64,000 nucleotides of DNA, taken from Antechinus flavipes (Eukaryota). Of this stretch, positions 1 to 15,554 are shown one piece after another. The stretch is taken from assembly GCF_016432865.1 (NCBI RefSeq), contig NC_067400.1:556698001-556762000 (forward strand), given 5' to 3'. The translations under genes and the position numbers were made by a program. Under the pieces are notes generated by a model. The model searched no databases. It saw only the letters and a list, made by a program, of their open reading frames with translations, and had not been told where the DNA came from. The stretch's first letter is position 1, and the number at the start of each line of letters is the position of its first letter.

Positions 1-954
1 TGAACATGAATTTAATTTGGTCAGCTAGCCACATTAAAAAATTAAAAACCAATCTCTACCATACCTCAATTTCTCTAGCATTACAAGTGATAATCAAATT
101 CCTGAGACAATAGTGAATAGAATACTCCTCATTTCTACTTCTAGGCCATAAAATTAGCATATTAATGACATGAAGAACTGGATAAATTTGTCTTCTTGTC
201 CTTTTGGAATTTAGCCCACTTCACTTGGCATTACAATGACAATAAACTTTGCCCCTTGACTTAGAGATGGGTTCAGGCCTGCCAAATCTTTTGAGACACC
301 TTTCTATACCAATCTGCCACTCCAACCTTTTAAGGTCTCCCTTCTGAATCTCCACAATGACCACCATCAGTATCTCACTCAGTTATTGAGCTACAGCATT
401 TCTCTCTTATATCTCTTTCCATGTAGCTTCAAACCTTTCTCTTGTGTTCTATTTTTTGAAATCTGCTATGTGGGATTTGAAAATAGTAGAAAGACTGCTA
501 GATATATAGTTAAGAGTCTGTATTTCCAGGCTCTATTACTGAAAAGCTATATAGCATGAGACAAATCTTTCATGTAAGAGATTTGAATCAAAAAGGGTTA
601 TCTAATAATTAACCTCCTTGATTCAAAGTACTGTATTGAAGATCAAGTGAATTTGTGGAAGAGAGGTGTAGTGATGCACACCTACAGGTCTTGATACTGA
701 AGAAGCTGAAACTGGTGGATCACTTAGGTTTGGGAGTTCTGAGATGCGGTACAACTGAAGCCCATCAAGTACCATGTTTGAACAATATATGAACTTTTCC
801 AGATAAGAGACCAGCAGGTTACATGAGAAGGGGTGAATTAACTCAGATCTAAAGTGAAGTTTAGCAATGGGGTGGGGCCAATGACAGGGTCTGCGCAAGC
901 AGATCCAGTCTCAAAAATTGATTGATTAATAAGAAAAATAAAAGTCTTTGAAAA

Positions 955-1106
955 GGGGTAGCTAGGTTGCACAGTGGTTGCATCAGCCCTGAAGTCAGGT
1001 GGACTTGAATTCAAATATGACCTCAGACACTTAACCTTTCCTAGCTGTAAGACCCTGGGCAAGTCATTTAACCCCAATTGCCGCAGCAAAAAATAAAAAT
1101 AAAATA
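955..1106 (+). mobile_element. WSINE1-type marsupial SINE, full length, with 17-bp target-site duplication
   Basis: tRNA-derived head GGGGTAGCTAGGTTGCACAGTGG, CORE segment and A-rich tail; TAAAAGTCTTTGAAAAG at 939-955 and 1107-1123. Confidence 0.85.
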
Positions 1107-1838
1107 TAAAAGTCTTTGAAAAGTAAAAAGATTGCAAAAATGTAAGTGATAGGTATTGTTAATACTTAATATTCTTTCTCTCCTATCCCCTCCTATTTCC
1201 TTAGGTCAATAATTCAAGATTCTGTTCCAGCCATTAGAGATCATCTTCTGGCAGGGCTGAATTCCAGTCCCTATACTCTTCATATTTACTCACCTGCTTT
1301 CTTTATCAGCTGGGCTTCCTCTGCCCACATCTGCAGAACCCCAGACCTGTGCTCTGCCTATCTAGTACCTCAATCTTTTTTCCCTAGGGTGGTTGATAGC
1401 CTTTGGGCCACCCTTTGCTACTGAGATATTTATAGTAACTGCACAAACAATGCCTCTAGGACTTCAGGCTAAGGCTTAATAGTGACTCTTAAGGGACTCC
1501 TATATTCATAGGAAGCCTTTGAATTCACAGGTCTTGGGGAGTTGGGAGGGGGGGAGGGAGGGAGAGGGTCAGGGCTCCTCCCTCCTTCTCTCCTTCCCTG
1601 CCCAAATGGATCAAGATTTTTAAGTTTTACTGCTAAGAGACCTTAGGAATCAACTAGTCTAATTTTCATATTTTAGAGAAAGGAAATGAGATGTGATGAT
1701 AATTAACATTTATATACTGCTCTAACATTTACACAACCTTTCAAATGTATTTTCTTTTTTGAGCCTCCCAACAAAACTTAGAGTTCACAAGTCAAGTCAA
1801 TAAACATTTATTTAGTGCCACTGTGTGCCAAGCATTAT

Positions 1839-1974
1839 NNNNNNNNNNNNNNNNNNNNNNNNNNNNNNNNNNNNNNNNNNNNNNNNNNNNNNNNNNNNNN
1901 NNNNNNNNNNNNNNNNNNNNNNNNNNNNNNNNNNNNNNNNNNNNNNNNNNNNNNNNNNNNNNNNNNNNNNNNNN
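1839..1974. other. Assembly gap (136 N)
   Basis: Run of N. Confidence 1.
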
Positions 1975-2109
1975 TCTGGTAATATAATAATAATAAATAT
2001 AATAAATAATGGGAGTATTCTCATAGGGAAGATATTAAGATTAAAAAGGATCCAGGAGGGGCAGAACAAAATGGTAAAGTAGAAGAAGGAATCCAGTTAA
2101 ACTTTCATC

Positions 2110-2465
2110 AATCACCTCAGGGCACAGTAACAGCAATATTGTAATGATAATCAACTGGGAAAGATTTAGTTACTTTTATAGATACCATGATCTAAGACAG
2201 GTCCAAAGGATTCATGATGAAAAATGTTATCCCTCTTAAGAAAATGAACTGATGGACTCAGAGTACAAATTGAAATATAATTTTTTTGACTTTTTTTTTT
2301 TGCTTTTTTTGTAGCATAGCTAATATGGAAAATATTTTGCCTTATTTTACATGTATAATTTATATCATATTGCTTGTCTTCTTAGAGGGTGAGGGAAGGA
2401 CTTGGAGAAAAGGATGATTGTGGAACTCAAATTTTAGAAGGTCATTTAAAATAAATAAATAATCT
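2110..2465 (+). mobile_element. Old L1 3' UTR fragment
   Basis: Resembles marsupial L1 3' UTR (GAACTGATGGACTCAGAGTACAAATTGAA...GGAACTCAAATTT) ending in an AATAAA-rich tail. Confidence 0.6.
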
Positions 2466-2900
2466 AAAAGGACTCAGGAAAAGCTTTTTACAGAAGGTGG
2501 GATTTTGACTGAAACTTAAGGAAAATTAGGTTAAGATAAAAGATAGAAATGAGTAGGGAGAGTCCCAGCCCTGATTACTGAGGTGATCAAAATGTCTGGA
2601 TTGGGGAGATAGTGTCTTGTGAAAAGAATAGCAAGGAGGTCAGTGTTACTGGATAATACAGTATGTGAAAGGGAGTGAATTGTAAAAAGACTGGAAAGGT
2701 AGGAAGGAACCAGCTCATGAAGAGTTTTAAAAGTTAAACAAAGTATTTTATATATCCTGGGGGTTAAAAGGATTCACTGGAATTTATTGAATAGAGGAAG
2801 GATATGATCATCCATTATTTTAGGAAAATAACTTTGACAACTGAGTGGAGACTGAATTGGAGTAGAGAGATACTTGAGGCAGAAAAGAAGGGCAGGAAGA
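2466..2900 (-). mobile_element. L2 LINE fragment
   Basis: Purine-rich antisense L2-like sequence (GAAGGTGGGATTTTGACTGAAACTT...). Confidence 0.6.
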
Positions 2901-5589: not shown

Positions 5590-6534
5590 TCAATGTTTCC
5601 CCAAAGAGACCACCTTGAGGATGGCTCGACGGATTTGCTGGGTCTTGACACTGTAGATCACAGGGTTCATCAAGGGTGGGAAGAGCACTGAGACTGTGCC
5701 CATCAGCACATGCACAACGGGAGAAGCATGGCGCCCAAAGCGGTGAACAATGGACAAGCCGAGCACAGGCACATAGAAGCACAGCACGGCCAGGATGTGG
5801 GACACACATGTGTTAAGGGCTTTGAGTCTCTCCTTGGCAGAGGCGATGGAGAGCACGGTGCAGAGGATAATGGTGTAGGAGACCAGGATAAAGAGCACAT
5901 CAGAGCCCATGGCCAACATGATAATGCACAGACCATAGATGCTATTGAAGCGTGTGTCAGAACAGGAAAGCCGGATCATGTCCTGATGTAAGCAATAAGC
6001 ATGAGAGAGGGCCCCCGGGCGGCAGTACTGGAAAGTGAAGAGGCGGAGCGAGGGGGCTGCTGTGATAACAGCACTCCTCAAACCCAGCACTGCCCCAGCC
6101 AGGGCCACGCGGGGGCCAGAGAGGATGCTGGAATAGCGCAGTGGGAAGCGAATGGCCACCAGGCGGTCCAGGGCCATGGCAAAAAGGACAGCAGACTCCA
6201 TAAAGGAGAAGGAATGGAGGAAATGCTGCTGGAGAATGCAGGACACCAGCCCAATGGCCCGCGCATCAAACCACAGCACACCCAGCACGGTGGGCAGAGT
6301 CGACATGCACAGACCCAAGTCTGTCACTGCCAGAATCGCCAGGAAGTAGTACATGGGCTGGTGCAGGGAGTTCTCAGTGCGCACCAGGTGGAGGATGGTG
6401 ATGTTGCCCAGGACAGCCACAAGGTAGCCTGCAAAGATGGGCAGAGAGATCCAGCAGTGAGCCCACTCCAGACCTGGGAAACCAGTCAGCATAAAGGTGG
6501 TAAAGCTGAAATTGGTCCTGGGCAGGTTAGGCAT
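5590..6534 (-). CDS. Class I olfactory receptor, OR51 family, intact main exon (314 aa from ATG 6534); possible upstream coding exon
   Basis: LHQPMYYFL, MALDRLVAIRFPLRY, SHAYCLHQD, KALNTCVSH, HRFG, PPLMNPVIYSVKT; N-glycosylation NFS. The ORF-track start at 6558 is TTG; the first in-frame ATG is 6534. Confidence 0.95.
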   Translation of the reverse strand: MPNLPRTNFSFTTFMLTGFPGLEWAHCWISLPIFAGYLVAVLGNITILHLVRTENSLHQPMYYFLAILAVTDLGLCMSTLPTVLGVLWFDARAIGLVSCILQQHFLHSFSFMESAVLFAMALDRLVAIRFPLRYSSILSGPRVALAGAVLGLRSAVITAAPSLRLFTFQYCRPGALSHAYCLHQDMIRLSCSDTRFNSIYGLCIIMLAMGSDVLFILVSYTIILCTVLSIASAKERLKALNTCVSHILAVLCFYVPVLGLSIVHRFGRHASPVVHVLMGTVSVLFPPLMNPVIYSVKTQQIRRAILKVVSLGKH

Positions 6535-6634
6535 CCTTGGAAATTCTTCCTGGGACAAATTGGTGTGGAGTAGTTAATGAAACAAAATTTTTAAAAAGGC
6601 CAGTCTCTCCCATTAATCCCAAACCATCACTTAC

Positions 6635-6664
6635 CTTGGCAACAGGCTGAGTATCCATAATCAT
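6635..6664 (-). CDS. Predicted short upstream coding exon of the 5590-6534 OR (MIMDTQPVAK)
   Basis: ATG at 6664 and 6658 (A-3, G+4 Kozak), donor AAG|GTAAGT at 6635/6634, phase-0 join to acceptor TTTGTCCCAG|GAA at 6550/6549. Confidence 0.55.
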
Positions 6665-7329
6665 TGCTTTTAGCAGAGGCTTCACTCAAAGTCTTCATAC
6701 TTCTCCCCTATTCAATTCTACCATCCCTTTCTTTATCCCTGGTCAATCCTTAAGGCTGGATCTTGCCTCCACTGTGACTTTTCTCTGCTATTATTCTCAA
6801 ACTGCATTGCTGCTGTAGATAAGTATAGAACTGGGATGCTATAACCTTTACTACATCTATTTTTATCTATTCTCCAATGAGCATTCCCTGCTTCTTAGAA
6901 ATTCTAATATCTTTGACTCATTATCCAATTTAAAAAAAAAAAAAACTACCCAGGTGCCTCCTTAAAGGTCTAGACATACCTAACCCTTTGCAAATGATCG
7001 CCCATGCAAAGGCCATCTACAATGAGTTCCTTCATCCTTTTAGTACCAATCAATGTTTCTTTTTGAGTAATTCACTGTAAAGTTTTTAACTTCAGTTATT
7101 TTATTTGTAAAATGAGGTAGCTAAATAGTGATTTCTAATGTTCCTTCTAGCTCTAAATTTCTAACTTTCTCCCATTAAAAAAATATCAGAAATTAACTAA
7201 ACTTTTTTTGGTGGGTTGTGGGAGGGGAAGAAGTGTTTGTATCTGTTGGGAAATATTAATAAATGTCAAAAAATGCATCATTATGTTTTTAATATTTAAT
7301 TTTAAGCAGAGGCCATTTCTACCTAAACA

Positions 7330-8179: not shown

Positions 8180-8405
8180 GGACAAAAGGAAGGGAAAGAA
8201 AAGTGAAAGAGAAAAAGAAGGAGGGAGGGAGGAAAATAGGAAGGAAAGAAGAATGGAAGAAAAGAAGGAAGAAAGGTAAGAAAGAAGGAAAGAAGAAAGG
8301 AAGAAGGGAAGAAAGGCAGAGAGGGAGGGAAGGAGAGAAGAAAGAAGAGAGGGAAGGAGGGAGGGAGGAAGAGAGACCAAAGGCAGGAGGAAGGGAAGGA
8401 AGAGA
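8180..8405. repeat. Purine-rich (GGAA/GAAA/GGGA) low-complexity repeat
   Basis: Direct reading. Confidence 0.95.
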
Positions 8406-11643: not shown

Positions 11644-11950
11644 ACTTACCCTCTCCAAGTGTTCATTTCAGTATTCACTTACCTGCTCTCTCTGATGGCT
11701 GGAGTTCTGCTGCTCACATCTATAGAGCCAGGCCTGTTCTCTGCTTACCTGGTATCTTTAAGGCCCTTGTCCACAATACCCTAGAGTCTGTGGGCTCCCC
11801 TCCCTTGATGTGATATTTATATCACCTCCCATTTCATAGATTATCACTGGGACTTCAGATTCAGCAGGGATTTCTAAATCACTGATGTAATGCTACTTAG
11901 GGAGTCCCTGATATCTATCACATGCTTATGAAGCCTATGTCCTCACTTTC
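11644..11950 (-). promoter_or_regulatory. Candidate first non-coding exon/promoter of the 5590-6534 OR with three alternative donors
   Basis: Minus-strand AGG|GTAAGT (exon end 11650), CAG|GTAAGT (11683) and CAG|GTAAGC (11749) in unique sequence. Confidence 0.4.
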
Positions 11951-13354
11951 CACTCAGAGATTATAGCAATGCCACGTTTTGTTCCTAGGATTTGAAGTGA
12001 AAAGATACTTGAAGGATCATTTAGTTTAATCCTATCTTTTTATTTTTTCCTTCAATTTTTAAAAATTTTCCTCAATTACACAAAATTTTTTTTACATTTA
12101 TTTTTCAAAGTGTGAATTCCATATTCTGCCCTTTCTATCCCATGCCCTCTTATTGAGAAGACATATTTGAAGTTATGAAAAATATTTCATAAAAGTCTTG
12201 TTGCAAAAGAAGATAGATCTCCACCTCCCAAAAAATCTTCAAGAAAGATAAAGTTAAAAAAAAAAAGGTATGCATCAATCTATATTTAGATCCAATCATT
12301 TCTTCCTCTGTAACCTGCCTTTTGAGAGAGGTAGAGCCTGAGAAGCAGTGTAGAGAAATGTAGACTAATAATTTTTATGCAGCACCTTAAGTTTTATAAA
12401 ACCCTTCCGATTCATTTTCTCATTTGAGCCTCAACAATAACTCTATGAACTAGGTGTTATCATTATTTCTATTTTTCAAAACAGAAGAGTTACTAAATGA
12501 CTCTGACAGAATTTCAATGCAGGCCTTTTTTTACTCAGATCAGGACTTAGTCCACAATGCTACTTCTCTCCATACAACAAAAAGGCAACCAATCCAGGAA
12601 AGTGGATTGTTGCCTCAACAAGAAATGCCAGATTTGGTGTCCAAAGATCTTTGTTCAAATTTTGCCTTTGCTACTAACTAGCTGTGTGATGATGGGCAAA
12701 TCAGGATCCTCTGGGCTTTGGTTTCCTTCTCTGTAAAATTAGGAGTTTTATTTACTTTTGTTTTGCCTATCTATTTTCCTATGTACTAATTTTTCCCCAT
12801 GGGAACAGAGAATATTACCAGAGACCAAAAAACTTGATTGTTTCAGTATTCTATTTCTTATCTTCACAATGAATAGGGGAAGGATGAGAGGGTAGGACTG
12901 AATTTGGAACTGAAAATAAAAATAACATTTAAAATAAAAAGAAATTAATAAACTTTGTTTCTCTTCTAGAGCTGAGCACAGTGTTCAGGACACAAGTAAC
13001 AAATAATCATTCAATGAATAAGTGAAAAAAATTAAAAAATGTGGAAATTAGAGAATAGAACTGTGAACCCAAAAACAACCCATGACTGGAACTAAGAATG
13101 GAGTATGGCTTGGAATAAAAGCGTTTTTGTTTGCAGTGAAAGTGGCTCCCCCATCTTTCAAATCTAACTTTTCCTTAAATTATTTTGTATTTATCATGTA
13201 TTTTTTATTACCATTGCATATTCATATCACTGGTATCAAAATTAAATTGAAAAAGTTCTACATAAGGATTCTTACAGTGACATATTGACTTAGTGTTTAA
13301 AATGTATTAGTATCTAATTTAAAATGTATTAGTATTCCTAATTACTGCTGAAGA

Positions 13355-13575
13355 CCATAACTTAAAAAGGCCAAAGTCTCCTGTTTCATGCAGGGCCACC
13401 TCTAATACTCTTGAACTATATCTGGCCACTGGACTCAGATGGCTCTGGAGGGAAAAGTGAGGCAGGTCAGCTTGCACAGTGCCCCCTCAATGGAATCAAA
13501 TTCACTTGCATGTCATGGCTTCAACTCTCTAATGTCATGATCCTTTTGGAGACAAAGGTCAAACAACAACAATAT
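13355..13575 (-). mobile_element. RTE-associated marsupial SINE
   Basis: Reverse complement of the 7330-7505 family (ATTCACTTGCATGTCATGG...GACAAAGGTCAAACAACAAC). Confidence 0.65.
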
Positions 13576-14055
13576 TTTAATCTGGTTCAGGCCACTCATA
13601 GGAAAGTTGTAGGGTCACCACACACCATTTCCCCCCTTTCCCCCCCCCCCAGCTTTGTGTTTGCCATTTCTGCCATATAGGTTGCCTCTTGCCTCTTCCA
13701 CAGAAGGTAAATTCCTAGAGAAGAGATTGTTTCATTTTTGTCTTTTCATCCTCAGTGGTTAGCACAGGGCTTAGCTCACAGAGCACATTTAATAAAAATT
13801 GTTTATTAACTGAAAATGATGGATCAGAGTACAAGGTCTACTCAAAATTTCACATCCAGTTAAGGAGTTTGGAGCAATAAAATCTCTGATCTGTTACTAC
13901 TTACATGTCTCCTGCAAAAATTCCATCCTGTCTGAAAGACAAAAAAACATCCTATTTCTCTAATTGAATGAAACAACATCCTGGCTTCTTCCTTCTCTGT
14001 ACCTTGCTCTCAGAATGTGGGCTGTTAACCTACTTGATTGTGTGTGGTTCAGAAA

Positions 14056-14465
14056 TGATGAGGGGTCACCATTTAATAAAAAGCCGGAGAGATCTCTAGA
14101 AGCAAAGCAAAGTTTATTCTATGTTCATGCTGGAAGGACGGCCCACTCATCGGGCAGACAATCAAAGAGAGTAAGCACCATAGTGGGCAGGGTCAACACT
14201 TTTAATCCCTAACACAAATACCCCCTCCCACCACTGACCCTCATCCTTACTGGCTGAGGATTTTACATTCTAAATGCAGGAACTACCCAAGAAATTGAAC
14301 TTGACCAATAAGTACATAGTTGCCCATATTTGACTGAAATAGGGAGATGCTGATGTCATGGGAGGATAGCAGGAAGAGGACTTAAGTATGCCCTTGACTC
14401 AATACTTAAAGTTCTTCAGACCTACTTAAAATCTGAAATAAATGAAGCCTTACTCGATTTTTACA
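14056..14465 (-). mobile_element. Probable ERV solo LTR
   Basis: Minus strand starts TGTAAAA; TATA-like ATTAAAA and poly(A) signal AATAAA in LTR order; no TSD found. Confidence 0.5.
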
Positions 14466-15554
14466 ACTGTCTTGAAATATCTCACCTCATCGCATTCAAC
14501 TGAAGCCCCAACTTTTCAGAATATAAAGCTCTCCCAAACTTCTTTTAATTGCCAGTCTCTCTCAGAGATTGTCTTTCTGTTTTGGCATTAAGTCTTTTGT
14601 GAATATAAGACAATCTCTTTGAATTTTTAAACTATGAACCCTGACTCAAAAATACATAGCTGAAAGCACTGAATATCTAGAGATATGGGTACTGTAATCC
14701 TAAGATAGTCACTAAAAAGCAGGGATTCTAGCTGTCCTTTAATTTATATAATGCTTTGATTTTTGAAGATCTAAGACTCTATTCCTGTATTAAATGGATT
14801 CTTGTTCATCCTGCATTGGAATTGTGTGCCAGGGAACTTTATCTTTACTCTAGAATCTCCTTCCCCAGGGGCACTTTGTCTATATTCTAATTTAGGGCTT
14901 ACTTAGATCAAAGGAAGCCCCACCTATGAATTTGTGTAGCAGATAGATTAATATGTAAACAGGGGTCCCCTGAATCTCAGCTCAATCTATGATAGAACAA
15001 GGGAAATAAGTCTGACTTCTTATGAGAATAGATGATTTATAAAGAAAGCAAAGGGGTTAGTTCTGACTTAGTGTTTCAGCTTTGTAGGTTTTTGTTTCTA
15101 TCTTCAATCCCTACCACAGTATAGAAATATAGTAAATGATGGCTGAATCAAATTGAATTGGAGCTAGGAACAAGAAAGATCTATGATTCTGAATCAAAAT
15201 ACCTCAGTTTGTCCCAGGAATAGAGAGTGCTGTTTGAGAGGCAAAGGCTGCCACTGACAAGGTTTTGCCCAACTTGACATTTATTTGATCACAGAAGCTG
15301 GCTCCGTTTTGAAATGTTTATGCTATGATCAGTTTGTTTTAGTTTGATTTTGATGACCCTGGGAAGTGCTCTGGCCAGAGTCAGTTTCAGTCAGTGTTTC
15401 TCAGTGTTTCTCACCTGTCCATCAGACACCCAATCACCCAATCACCCAAGTGATTATATAAATCTCGATTCCTTCTCTGATCTCACTGTACTTACCAGGA
15501 AATATTTACAAGTTTATAATGTGAAATATATTACACATTTAGTTATAAAAGTAA

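What the first reader, a model, noticed from the sequence alone, without database searches (positions are those of the whole stretch)
6535..6664. Olfactory receptor with a split coding region: in-frame upstream exon and 85-nt intron
Seen on the minus strand: ATG ATT ATG GAT ACT CAG CCT GTT GCC AAG | GTAAGT (donor at 6634) ... branch-like TTAAC (~6575) ... TTTGTCCCAG | GAA GAA TTT CCA AGG ATG. The join is phase 0 with no stops and gives M(IM)DTQPVAKEEFPR-MPNLPRTNFS, a 13-15 aa acidic N-terminal extension; ATG 6658 has a strong Kozak context. Established: most mammalian ORs have intronless CDSs and only a minority have an upstream coding exon. An ORF-only annotation would miss this isoform.
Basis: partly seen in the sequence, partly recalled or inferred. 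Interest (0 to 1): 0.75.

Follow-up and report, generated by a model that had tools for sequence, protein, structure and literature searches.

The report
Upstream start codon in smell-receptor leader
The proposed 85-base intron upstream of this marsupial smell-receptor gene looks real and old. The extra protein-coding piece exists only because of an 11-base deletion in the antechinus, so it is an ordinary upstream start codon in the gene's leader, not a conserved split coding region.

Summary
On the minus strand, ATG 6664/6658, donor AAG|GTAAGT (intron starts 6634), branch-like TTAAC, acceptor CCCAG| (ends 6550) and a 15-nt leader join in phase 0, without stops, to ATG 6534 of a 314-aa class I olfactory receptor. 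The receptor is OR51L1-like, the orthologue of mouse Or51ai2, in Antechinus flavipes.

In 11 marsupial copies, the donor and the acceptor are the best-conserved 9-mers of the upstream 266 nt. The branch motif varies only at its free position, and intron length stays 79-89 nt. So a short 5'-UTR intron is likely real.

The reading frame is not conserved:
- Seven copies have a stop before the donor.
- The two closest orthologues (devil, dunnart) are out of frame.
- Only the window and the bilby are in frame.

The window's frame comes from an 11-nt deletion between two AAGGTAA repeats. ATG 6534 is invariant and all database models start there.

A second, distal leader exon lies 5.1 kb upstream, with an invariant TATA box and a conserved donor at 11683. 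It fits the canonical receptor gene structure.

Verdict: a lineage-specific in-frame upstream ATG in a multi-exon leader. This is a known kind of feature and of low interest.

The parts
5590..6534 (-). Canonical coding exon part: 314-aa class I olfactory receptor (OR51L1-like, orthologue of mouse Or51ai2), stop included
   Evidence: ORF. Pfam 7tm_4 E 2.6e-105. 98% identical to Sarcophilus and 85% to mouse Or51ai2. This exact 314-aa sequence is already in NCBI/UniRef.
6535..6549 (-). 15-nt leader between acceptor and main ATG (5' UTR in the canonical reading; codes EEFPR in the extended reading)
   Evidence: Mean pairwise identity 0.90 in marsupials, but 1-nt indels occur in 4 of 11 copies, so it is not under a coding-frame constraint.
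6550..6634 (-). Candidate 85-nt 5'-UTR intron (GT at 6634-6633, AG at 6551-6550)
   Evidence: Length is 79-89 nt in 11 marsupial copies. The interior is less conserved (0.65) than its ends.
6629..6637 (-). Donor AAG|GTAAGT, a 9/9 match to the consensus
   Evidence: one of 4 such sites in the window. GT is kept in 10 of 11 copies (GC in one). Mean identity 0.92, rank 4 of 258 nine-nt windows.
6573..6577 (-). Branch-point-like TTAAC (yUnAy), 24 nt before the acceptor
   Evidence: the copies read TTAAC, CTAAC, TTGAC or TTCAC, and vary mainly at the free third position.
6550..6560 (-). Acceptor ATTTGTCCCAG|
   Evidence: CAG|G in 8 of 11 copies, and an AG shifted by one base in 3. These are the top three conserved 9-mers of the upstream region. 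All five receptors in the window and the mouse and elephant orthologues have an acceptor 13-45 nt before the ATG.
6656..6664 (-). Upstream ATGs 6664 and 6658, in frame with the receptor after the proposed splice
   Evidence: The ATG homologous to 6658 is present in 11 of 11 copies, but its frame is open and in phase in only 2 of 11.
6635..6812 (-). Candidate 178-nt internal 5'-UTR exon (E2). It holds five ATGs: 6807, 6724, 6698, 6664 and 6658.
   Evidence: A pyrimidine tract plus AG ending at 6813 is kept in 8 of 9 Australidelphian copies. ATG list: 6807 and 6724 open short uORFs, and 6698 is open to the donor but out of frame. The exon bounds are inferred, not shown by RNA.
6635..6640 (-). 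Site of the antechinus-specific 11-nt deletion (one period of AAGGTAA-CCAG-AAGGTAA collapsed)
   Evidence: the devil orthologue reads GCCAAGGTAACCAGAAGGTAAGT where the window reads GCCAAGGTAAGT. All 10 other copies have the long form.
11814..11821 (-). Invariant TATA box (TATAAATA) of a candidate distal promoter
   Evidence: TATAAATATC is invariant in 7 marsupials.
11683..11790 (-). Candidate distal non-coding exon 1. The 5' end is inferred about 25-30 nt after the TATA box. The exon ends at the donor CAG|GTAAGT. An alternative donor CCAG|GTAAGC ends the exon at 11749.
   Evidence: 9/9 donor at 11685-11677. AGGT is invariant in 7 of 7 marsupials. Splicing to 6550 gives a 5.1-kb intron, within the 0.55-22.6 kb range reported for mouse (PMC7055050).

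Best explanation
The stretch is part of the multi-exon 5' leader of a class I olfactory receptor gene of Antechinus flavipes.

Donor 6634 and acceptor 6550 bound a short intron of about 85 nt. It has been kept in marsupials since before the opossum/Australian split.

The ATG at 6658 is a conserved upstream ATG. In most marsupials it opens a short uORF of 3-8 codons, or in the devil and dunnart orthologues an out-of-frame uORF that overlaps the main start.

In the antechinus lineage an 11-nt slippage deletion between two AAGGTAA repeats removed one repeat. By accident this put the upstream ATGs in phase with the receptor ORF. Transcripts that include this leader exon could therefore yield a receptor with 13 or 15 extra N-terminal residues.

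The canonical product starts at ATG 6534. It is most simply made from transcripts that splice a distal exon (ending at 11683) directly to 6549.

Shown: the sequence features, their conservation, and the non-conservation of the frame. Inferred: that the exon is transcribed, that the intron is removed, and that the upstream ATG is used.
For: - Coordinates and frame.
- The donor is a 9/9 consensus match, 4 per window. No shuffle reproduces such a model.
- In 8 independent marsupial lineages the mean identity is 0.92 at the donor, 0.86 at the branch site, 0.88 at the acceptor and 0.90 in the leader. It is 0.65 in the intron interior and 0.64-0.74 in the exon body.
- The donor and acceptor are the top-ranked 9-mers.
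- Intron length is 79-89 nt in all copies.
- An upstream acceptor for the exon is kept in 8 of 9 Australidelphians.
- Frame of the conserved uATG: stop in 7 of 11 copies, out of frame in 2 of 11, in frame in 2 of 11.
- The 11-nt deletion lies between direct repeats.
- ATG 6534 is invariant, and the database proteins are 302-315 aa with none extended.
- uORFs occur in 86% of mouse OR genes and in-frame uATGs in 21.5%, and leaders are built of several short, alternatively spliced exons (PMC7055050). uORFs occur in 67% of Olfr mRNAs (PMC4627058).
Against: - There is no transcript evidence of any kind.
- The only related public contig seen (L009) is unspliced and looks genomic.
- An 85-nt intron is far below the 550-22,628 bp range reported for the last 5' intron of split mouse OR genes.
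- The acceptor, branch site and pyrimidine tract would be conserved anyway if they only serve the distal exon. The independent support for the short intron is therefore mainly the donor and the upstream acceptor.
- Three further ATGs (6807, 6724, 6698) precede 6664 in the candidate exon. Even if the exon is included, initiation at 6664/6658 may be minor.
Confidence: 0.6

Rival explanations
1. The stretch is never an exon. It lies inside the 5.1-kb intron between the distal exon (ends 11683) and the coding exon, or in a proximal promoter. On this view the donor-like 9-mer and the ATG are conserved for another reason, for example a regulatory site or slow marsupial divergence. Only the acceptor at 6550 is used.
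For: - The distal TATA box and donor are conserved in 7 of 7 marsupials, which gives a canonical OR gene structure.
- Published OR leader introns are kilobases long.
- Marsupial intergenic DNA here aligns widely at 66-76%.
- A conserved TGGGAGAGACTGG block sits inside the 'intron'.
- No extended or UTR-bearing model was seen.
Against: - The donor is a perfect consensus and, with the acceptor, is the best-conserved 9-mer of the region.
- A pyrimidine tract plus AG 178 nt upstream is conserved too, giving a complete exon definition.
- Intron length is held at 79-89 nt, above the minimal size for splicing.
Confidence: 0.27
2. One reading: a genuine split-CDS receptor isoform whose upstream coding exon supplies a selected N-terminal extension, missed by ORF-only annotation.
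For: - The join is in frame and stop-free, and ATG 6658 has a strong context.
- The bilby copy is also in frame.
- Barnes et al. describe OR isoforms that differ by 3-15 N-terminal residues.
Against: - The frame is broken in 9 of 11 copies, including the devil and dunnart orthologues.
- The window and bilby peptides share only the Met and the leader-encoded EEFPR.
- All 3 substitutions against the devil are non-synonymous.
- The frame was created by an 11-nt deletion.
- The leader has 1-nt indels.
- The conserved downstream Met gives a full-length ORF.
Confidence: 0.08
3. The 11-nt deletion is an assembly or consensus error at a short tandem repeat. The antechinus gene would then really look like the devil's, with the upstream ORF out of frame.
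For: The deletion lies exactly at a direct repeat with a period of 11 nt, a place where polishing errors can occur.
Against: The assembly is chromosome-level. The flanks and the CDS are clean. An 11-nt loss is larger than typical homopolymer errors.
Confidence: 0.05

Closest known systems
OR genes with in-frame upstream ATGs or uORFs in multi-exon 5' UTRs (Barnes et al. 2020, PMC7055050; Shum et al. 2015, PMC4627058)
   Same: Several short leader exons, an acceptor a few nt before the ATG, many upstream ATGs, and one of them in frame with the receptor ORF.
   Different: The last leader intron would be only 85 nt, against kilobases in mouse and human. The in-frame state can be traced to a dated 11-nt deletion. 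No RNA support is available here.
Split OR genes, second class of Barnes et al. 2020 (alternative isoforms with variable N-termini, differing by 3-15 aa)
   Same: An upstream exon supplies a Met and a few residues, an alternative single-exon ORF exists, and the junction falls in the extracellular N-terminus.
   Different: The conservation criterion for an intact split ORF in orthologues fails (2 of 11). A highly conserved downstream Met gives a full-length ORF, which is a case those authors exclude.
Mouse Or51ai2 (Olfr632) and the eutherian 'OR51L1-like' orthologues
   Same: 77-87% protein identity, the same class I cluster, and an acceptor about 20 nt before the ATG.
   Different: The eutherian start is two codons further upstream. 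There is no detectable non-coding similarity, and no consensus donor within 400 nt in mouse.

Membership tests
Class I olfactory receptor (family 51) | Seven-transmembrane OR domain with closest relatives in family 51 | tested here: met
   Pfam 7tm_4 E 2.6e-105. The best hits are OR51L1-like, Or51ai2 and 51V1-like. It forms a clade with the marsupial and eutherian orthologues.
Split OR gene (Barnes et al. 2020 criteria) | Transcript evidence for the exon-exon junction | not testable with these tools
The only related contig, L009, is unspliced.
Split OR gene (Barnes et al. 2020 criteria) | Initiating Met conserved in orthologues | tested here: met
   The ATG homologous to 6658 is present in 11 of 11 marsupial copies. 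ATG 6664 is present in only 6 of 11.
Split OR gene (Barnes et al. 2020 criteria) | Splice junction conserved in orthologues | tested here: met
   Donor GT in 10 of 11 copies. Acceptor AG in 11 of 11, shifted by 1 nt in 3 of them.
Split OR gene (Barnes et al. 2020 criteria) | Intact ORF across the two exons in orthologues | tested here: not met
   Open and in phase in 2 of 11 copies, a stop in 7 of 11, and out of frame in 2 of 11.
Split OR gene (Barnes et al. 2020 criteria) | No conserved downstream Met that gives a full-length single-exon ORF | tested here: not met
   ATG 6534 is invariant in 11 of 11 copies and gives 314 aa. All database models start there.
In-frame uATG in an OR 5' UTR | An ATG upstream of the main start, in phase and without a stop in the mature leader | tested here: inconclusive
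   True in the sequence if the 85-nt intron is removed. If the intron is kept, the same ATGs open a 45-codon out-of-frame ORF that ends at 6527. Transcription and splicing are untested.

The most novel reading that the evidence does not exclude
A conserved regulatory uORF of a deeply conserved marsupial odorant receptor was converted into new coding sequence by a single 11-nt slippage deletion in the antechinus lineage. Leader-exon-containing mRNAs would then make a receptor with a new 13-15-residue N-terminus instead of being repressed by an overlapping uORF. This would be a dated example of N-terminal sequence born from a 5' UTR.
Probability: 0.2. Interest if true: 0.4.

Novelty: new member of a known kind. 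Interest (0 to 1): 0.22.

Why it matters
For annotation, the canonical 314-aa model is right and no conserved coding exon has been missed. The gene probably has an unannotated multi-exon leader: a distal TATA-driven exon, a possible 178-nt internal exon, and an unusually short 85-nt intron.

For biology, it is a small, clean case of how an indel in a uORF-bearing leader can switch an upstream ATG between three states: short uORF, overlapping uORF and N-terminal extension. It bears on receptor translation only if olfactory RNA shows that the exon is used.

Tried and rejected
- RNA evidence. The look-up of sequencing runs gave only small-share 'RNA?' runs. No letters of 8204-8354 were sent to any search afterwards, and they were masked with N in the local blastn.
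- Joined model. I did not build or search the spliced protein. Frames were worked out exon by exon by arithmetic. The exon-1 piece of 8-10 codons is too short for any protein search tool.
- Eutherian conservation of the short intron. There is no alignable non-coding sequence with mouse or elephant. Mouse has no donor of at least 8/9 within 400 nt. Elephant has one at -281.
- Structured RNA in the stretch. Rfam finds nothing at E<=1.
- Barnes et al. supplements. Olfr632 is not in the held text.
- Earlier scan notes. Nothing bears on this feature.
- Proximal promoter upstream of 6700. No conserved TATA box was found, so this stays open.
- Alternative weak donor AAG|GTAACC in the devil orthologue. 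It would be in frame there, but it is absent or out of frame in the other copies.

Full report
**What is there.** On the minus strand the window holds, in order:
- ATG 6664 and ATG 6658.
- An exon end AAG at 6635.
- GTAAGT at 6634-6629.
- TTAAC at 6577-6573.
- TTTGTCCCAG ending at 6550.
- The 15-nt leader 6549-6535.
- ATG 6534, which opens a 314-aa ORF ending at 5590.

The ORF is an olfactory receptor (Pfam 7tm_4, E 2.6e-105). It belongs to class I family 51. It is 98% identical to a Tasmanian devil 'OR51L1-like' protein and 85% identical to mouse Or51ai2.

The intron would be 85 nt. Both upstream ATGs reach the donor in phase 0 and the leader has no stop.

The genome is Antechinus flavipes. 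Independently, the exact 314-aa protein lies on the same 636.7-Mb contig as a named A. flavipes paralogue, and that paralogue's locus overlaps window 1-2471 at 100% identity.

**Is it more than chance?** The donor matches MAG|GTRAGT at 9 of 9 positions. Only four such sites occur on both strands of the window, against 2.8 expected. I shuffled the upstream 300 nt and looked for an in-frame, stop-free ATG-donor-acceptor model. One appeared in 4.4% of shuffles at a donor match of at least 7/9, in 0.75% at 8/9, and in 0 of 2000 at 9/9.

**Orthologues.** Marsupials carry this receptor almost unchanged, at 93-98% protein identity across orders. Dasyurids and didelphids have two tandem copies about 13 kb apart. 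The window gene is the upstream copy. Its orthologues are L011 (devil), L007 (dunnart) and L006 (opossum).

I aligned the 300 nt upstream of the start in 11 copies from 8 lineages.
- The donor GT is kept in 10 of 11 copies, with GC in one.
- The branch motif reads TTAAC, CTAAC, TTGAC or TTCAC, so it changes mainly at the free position of yUnAy.
- The acceptor is CAG|G in 8 copies, and an AG shifted by one base in 3.
- Intron length stays at 79-89 nt.
- Across 8 lineages the mean pairwise identity is 0.92 at the donor, 0.86 at the branch site, 0.88 at the acceptor and 0.90 in the leader.
- The same measure is 0.65 in the intron interior and 0.64-0.74 in the exon body.
- Of 258 nine-nt windows upstream of the ATG, the three best sit on the acceptor and the next on the donor.

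This is the footprint expected of a used intron in non-coding sequence. A pyrimidine tract plus AG ending at 6813 is also kept in 8 of 9 Australidelphian copies. A complete 178-nt internal leader exon (6812-6635) can therefore be defined.

**The frame is not conserved.** The ATG homologous to 6658 is present in all 11 copies, but what follows it differs.
- Seven copies hit a stop 3-8 codons later, before the donor. These are the opossum upstream copy, the three dasyurid downstream copies, Dromiciops, the wombat and the Logan contig L009.
- The devil and dunnart orthologues are open but reach the donor in phase 2. After splicing they would read out of frame across the main ATG.
- Only the window and the bilby are open and in phase. 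Their exon-1 peptides share nothing but the Met.
- The three differences between antechinus and devil within the peptide are all non-synonymous.
- The leader has 1-nt indels in four copies.

The window is in frame because 11 nt are missing. The devil orthologue reads GCC-AAGGTAA-CCAG-AAGGTAA-GT, whereas the window reads GCC-AAGGTAA-GT. That is one period of a 7-nt direct repeat lost, as in replication slippage. All ten other copies have the long form.

ATG 6534 is invariant. Every database protein of the cluster is 302-315 aa and starts at it, including the existing record of this very protein.

**A better candidate for the main leader exon.** A second perfect donor lies at 11685-11677 on the same strand. 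It sits in a block that aligns in seven marsupials. The block has an invariant TATAAATATC at 11821 and an invariant AGGT at the donor, roughly 130 nt further on. Splicing from 11683 to 6549 gives a 5.1-kb intron, which is the usual size. Barnes et al. report 0.55-22.6 kb in mouse, leaders built of several short exons, and frequent alternative splicing (PMC7055050). The acceptor at 6550, its branch site and its pyrimidine tract would serve this distal exon as well. The independent evidence for the 85-nt intron is therefore the donor at 6634 and the upstream acceptor at 6813.

**How it most likely works.** The gene has a distal TATA-driven exon 1, an optional internal leader exon (6812-6635), and the coding exon. 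If the internal exon is included, the 85-nt intron is removed. Scanning ribosomes then meet ATGs in this order:
- 6807, which opens a uORF of 24 codons.
- 6724, which opens a uORF of 9 codons.
- 6698, which is open to the donor but out of frame.
- 6664 and 6658, which are in frame.

Such mRNAs would be translated inefficiently, and only a part of the product would be the extended receptor. If the intron were retained, 6664/6658 would instead open a 45-codon ORF that overlaps the main start.

Upstream ORFs are the rule in receptor mRNAs. They occur in 86% of mouse OR genes and 55% of human ones, and in-frame uATGs occur in 21.5% and 13.6%. They occur in 67% of Olfr mRNAs in a second study (PMC4627058). 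The feature therefore belongs to a known kind. Under the criteria of Barnes et al. it would not be called a split OR gene. The intact split ORF is not conserved, and a conserved downstream Met gives a full-length single-exon ORF.

**Limits.**
- I have no RNA evidence. The run search gave only small-share runs of uncertain type.
They were masked.
- I did not build or search the joined protein. Frames were computed exon by exon.
- Eutherian orthologues share no alignable non-coding sequence, so the age of the short intron beyond marsupials is open.
- Rfam finds nothing in 6300-7100.
- The 11-nt deletion was not checked against raw reads.

**Verdict.** I put a real short leader intron at about 0.65. 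A conserved or selected coding exon is unlikely, at below 0.1. The in-frame extension is a lineage-specific accident that may or may not be translated.

Noticed in passing
window 11677-11830 (minus strand): A candidate distal promoter and non-coding exon 1 for this receptor. TATAAATATC is invariant in 7 marsupials, and there are two conserved donors: CCAG|GTAAGC (exon end 11749) and CAG|GTAAGT (exon end 11683).
   Followed up: partly
window 1-2471 and L005: A tandem paralogue (315 aa, 'GKLR' C-terminus) starts about 7.5 kb before the window start. Its CDS plus about 640 nt upstream are 86% identical to the window copy. More distal upstream blocks are only 68-74% identical. This suggests gene conversion or constraint over the proximal part.
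   Followed up: partly
window 5590-6534: The receptor is unusually conserved for an OR, at 93-98% protein identity across Dasyuromorphia, Peramelemorphia, Diprotodontia, Microbiotheria and Didelphimorphia. This hints at a conserved ligand.
   Followed up: no
P0134 (UniProt A0A5F8HE33, Monodelphis): An automated opossum model starts MAIQPR and then continues TNFSF. The conserved upstream ATG of the opossum upstream copy encodes MEIQPR, so that model seems to start at the same uATG and join the CDS at a shared CCCAGG.
   Followed up: no
L012:9700-10000 and L004:9900-10000: The elephant and mouse orthologues share an acceptor CTTTCCAG|AGTG 20 nt before their ATG. Elephant has an 8/9 donor at -281 (a possible 261-nt intron). 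Mouse has none within 400 nt.
   Followed up: no
window 6600-6612 (minus strand, inside the 85-nt intron): A conserved TGGGAGAGACTGG block preceded by ATTAAT. A similar CTGGGAGAGCTGA lies at a similar distance from the mouse acceptor. It may be a regulatory site, but this is untested.
   Followed up: no
They were left out of all later searches and masked in the local comparison.
   Followed up: no
window 13007-15084 vs L011 1-2092: The order of three aligned blocks differs between antechinus and devil: a piece of about 460 nt (14041-14498) is displaced. The same piece matches a different place in the dunnart locus, so it is probably a mobile element.
   Followed up: no
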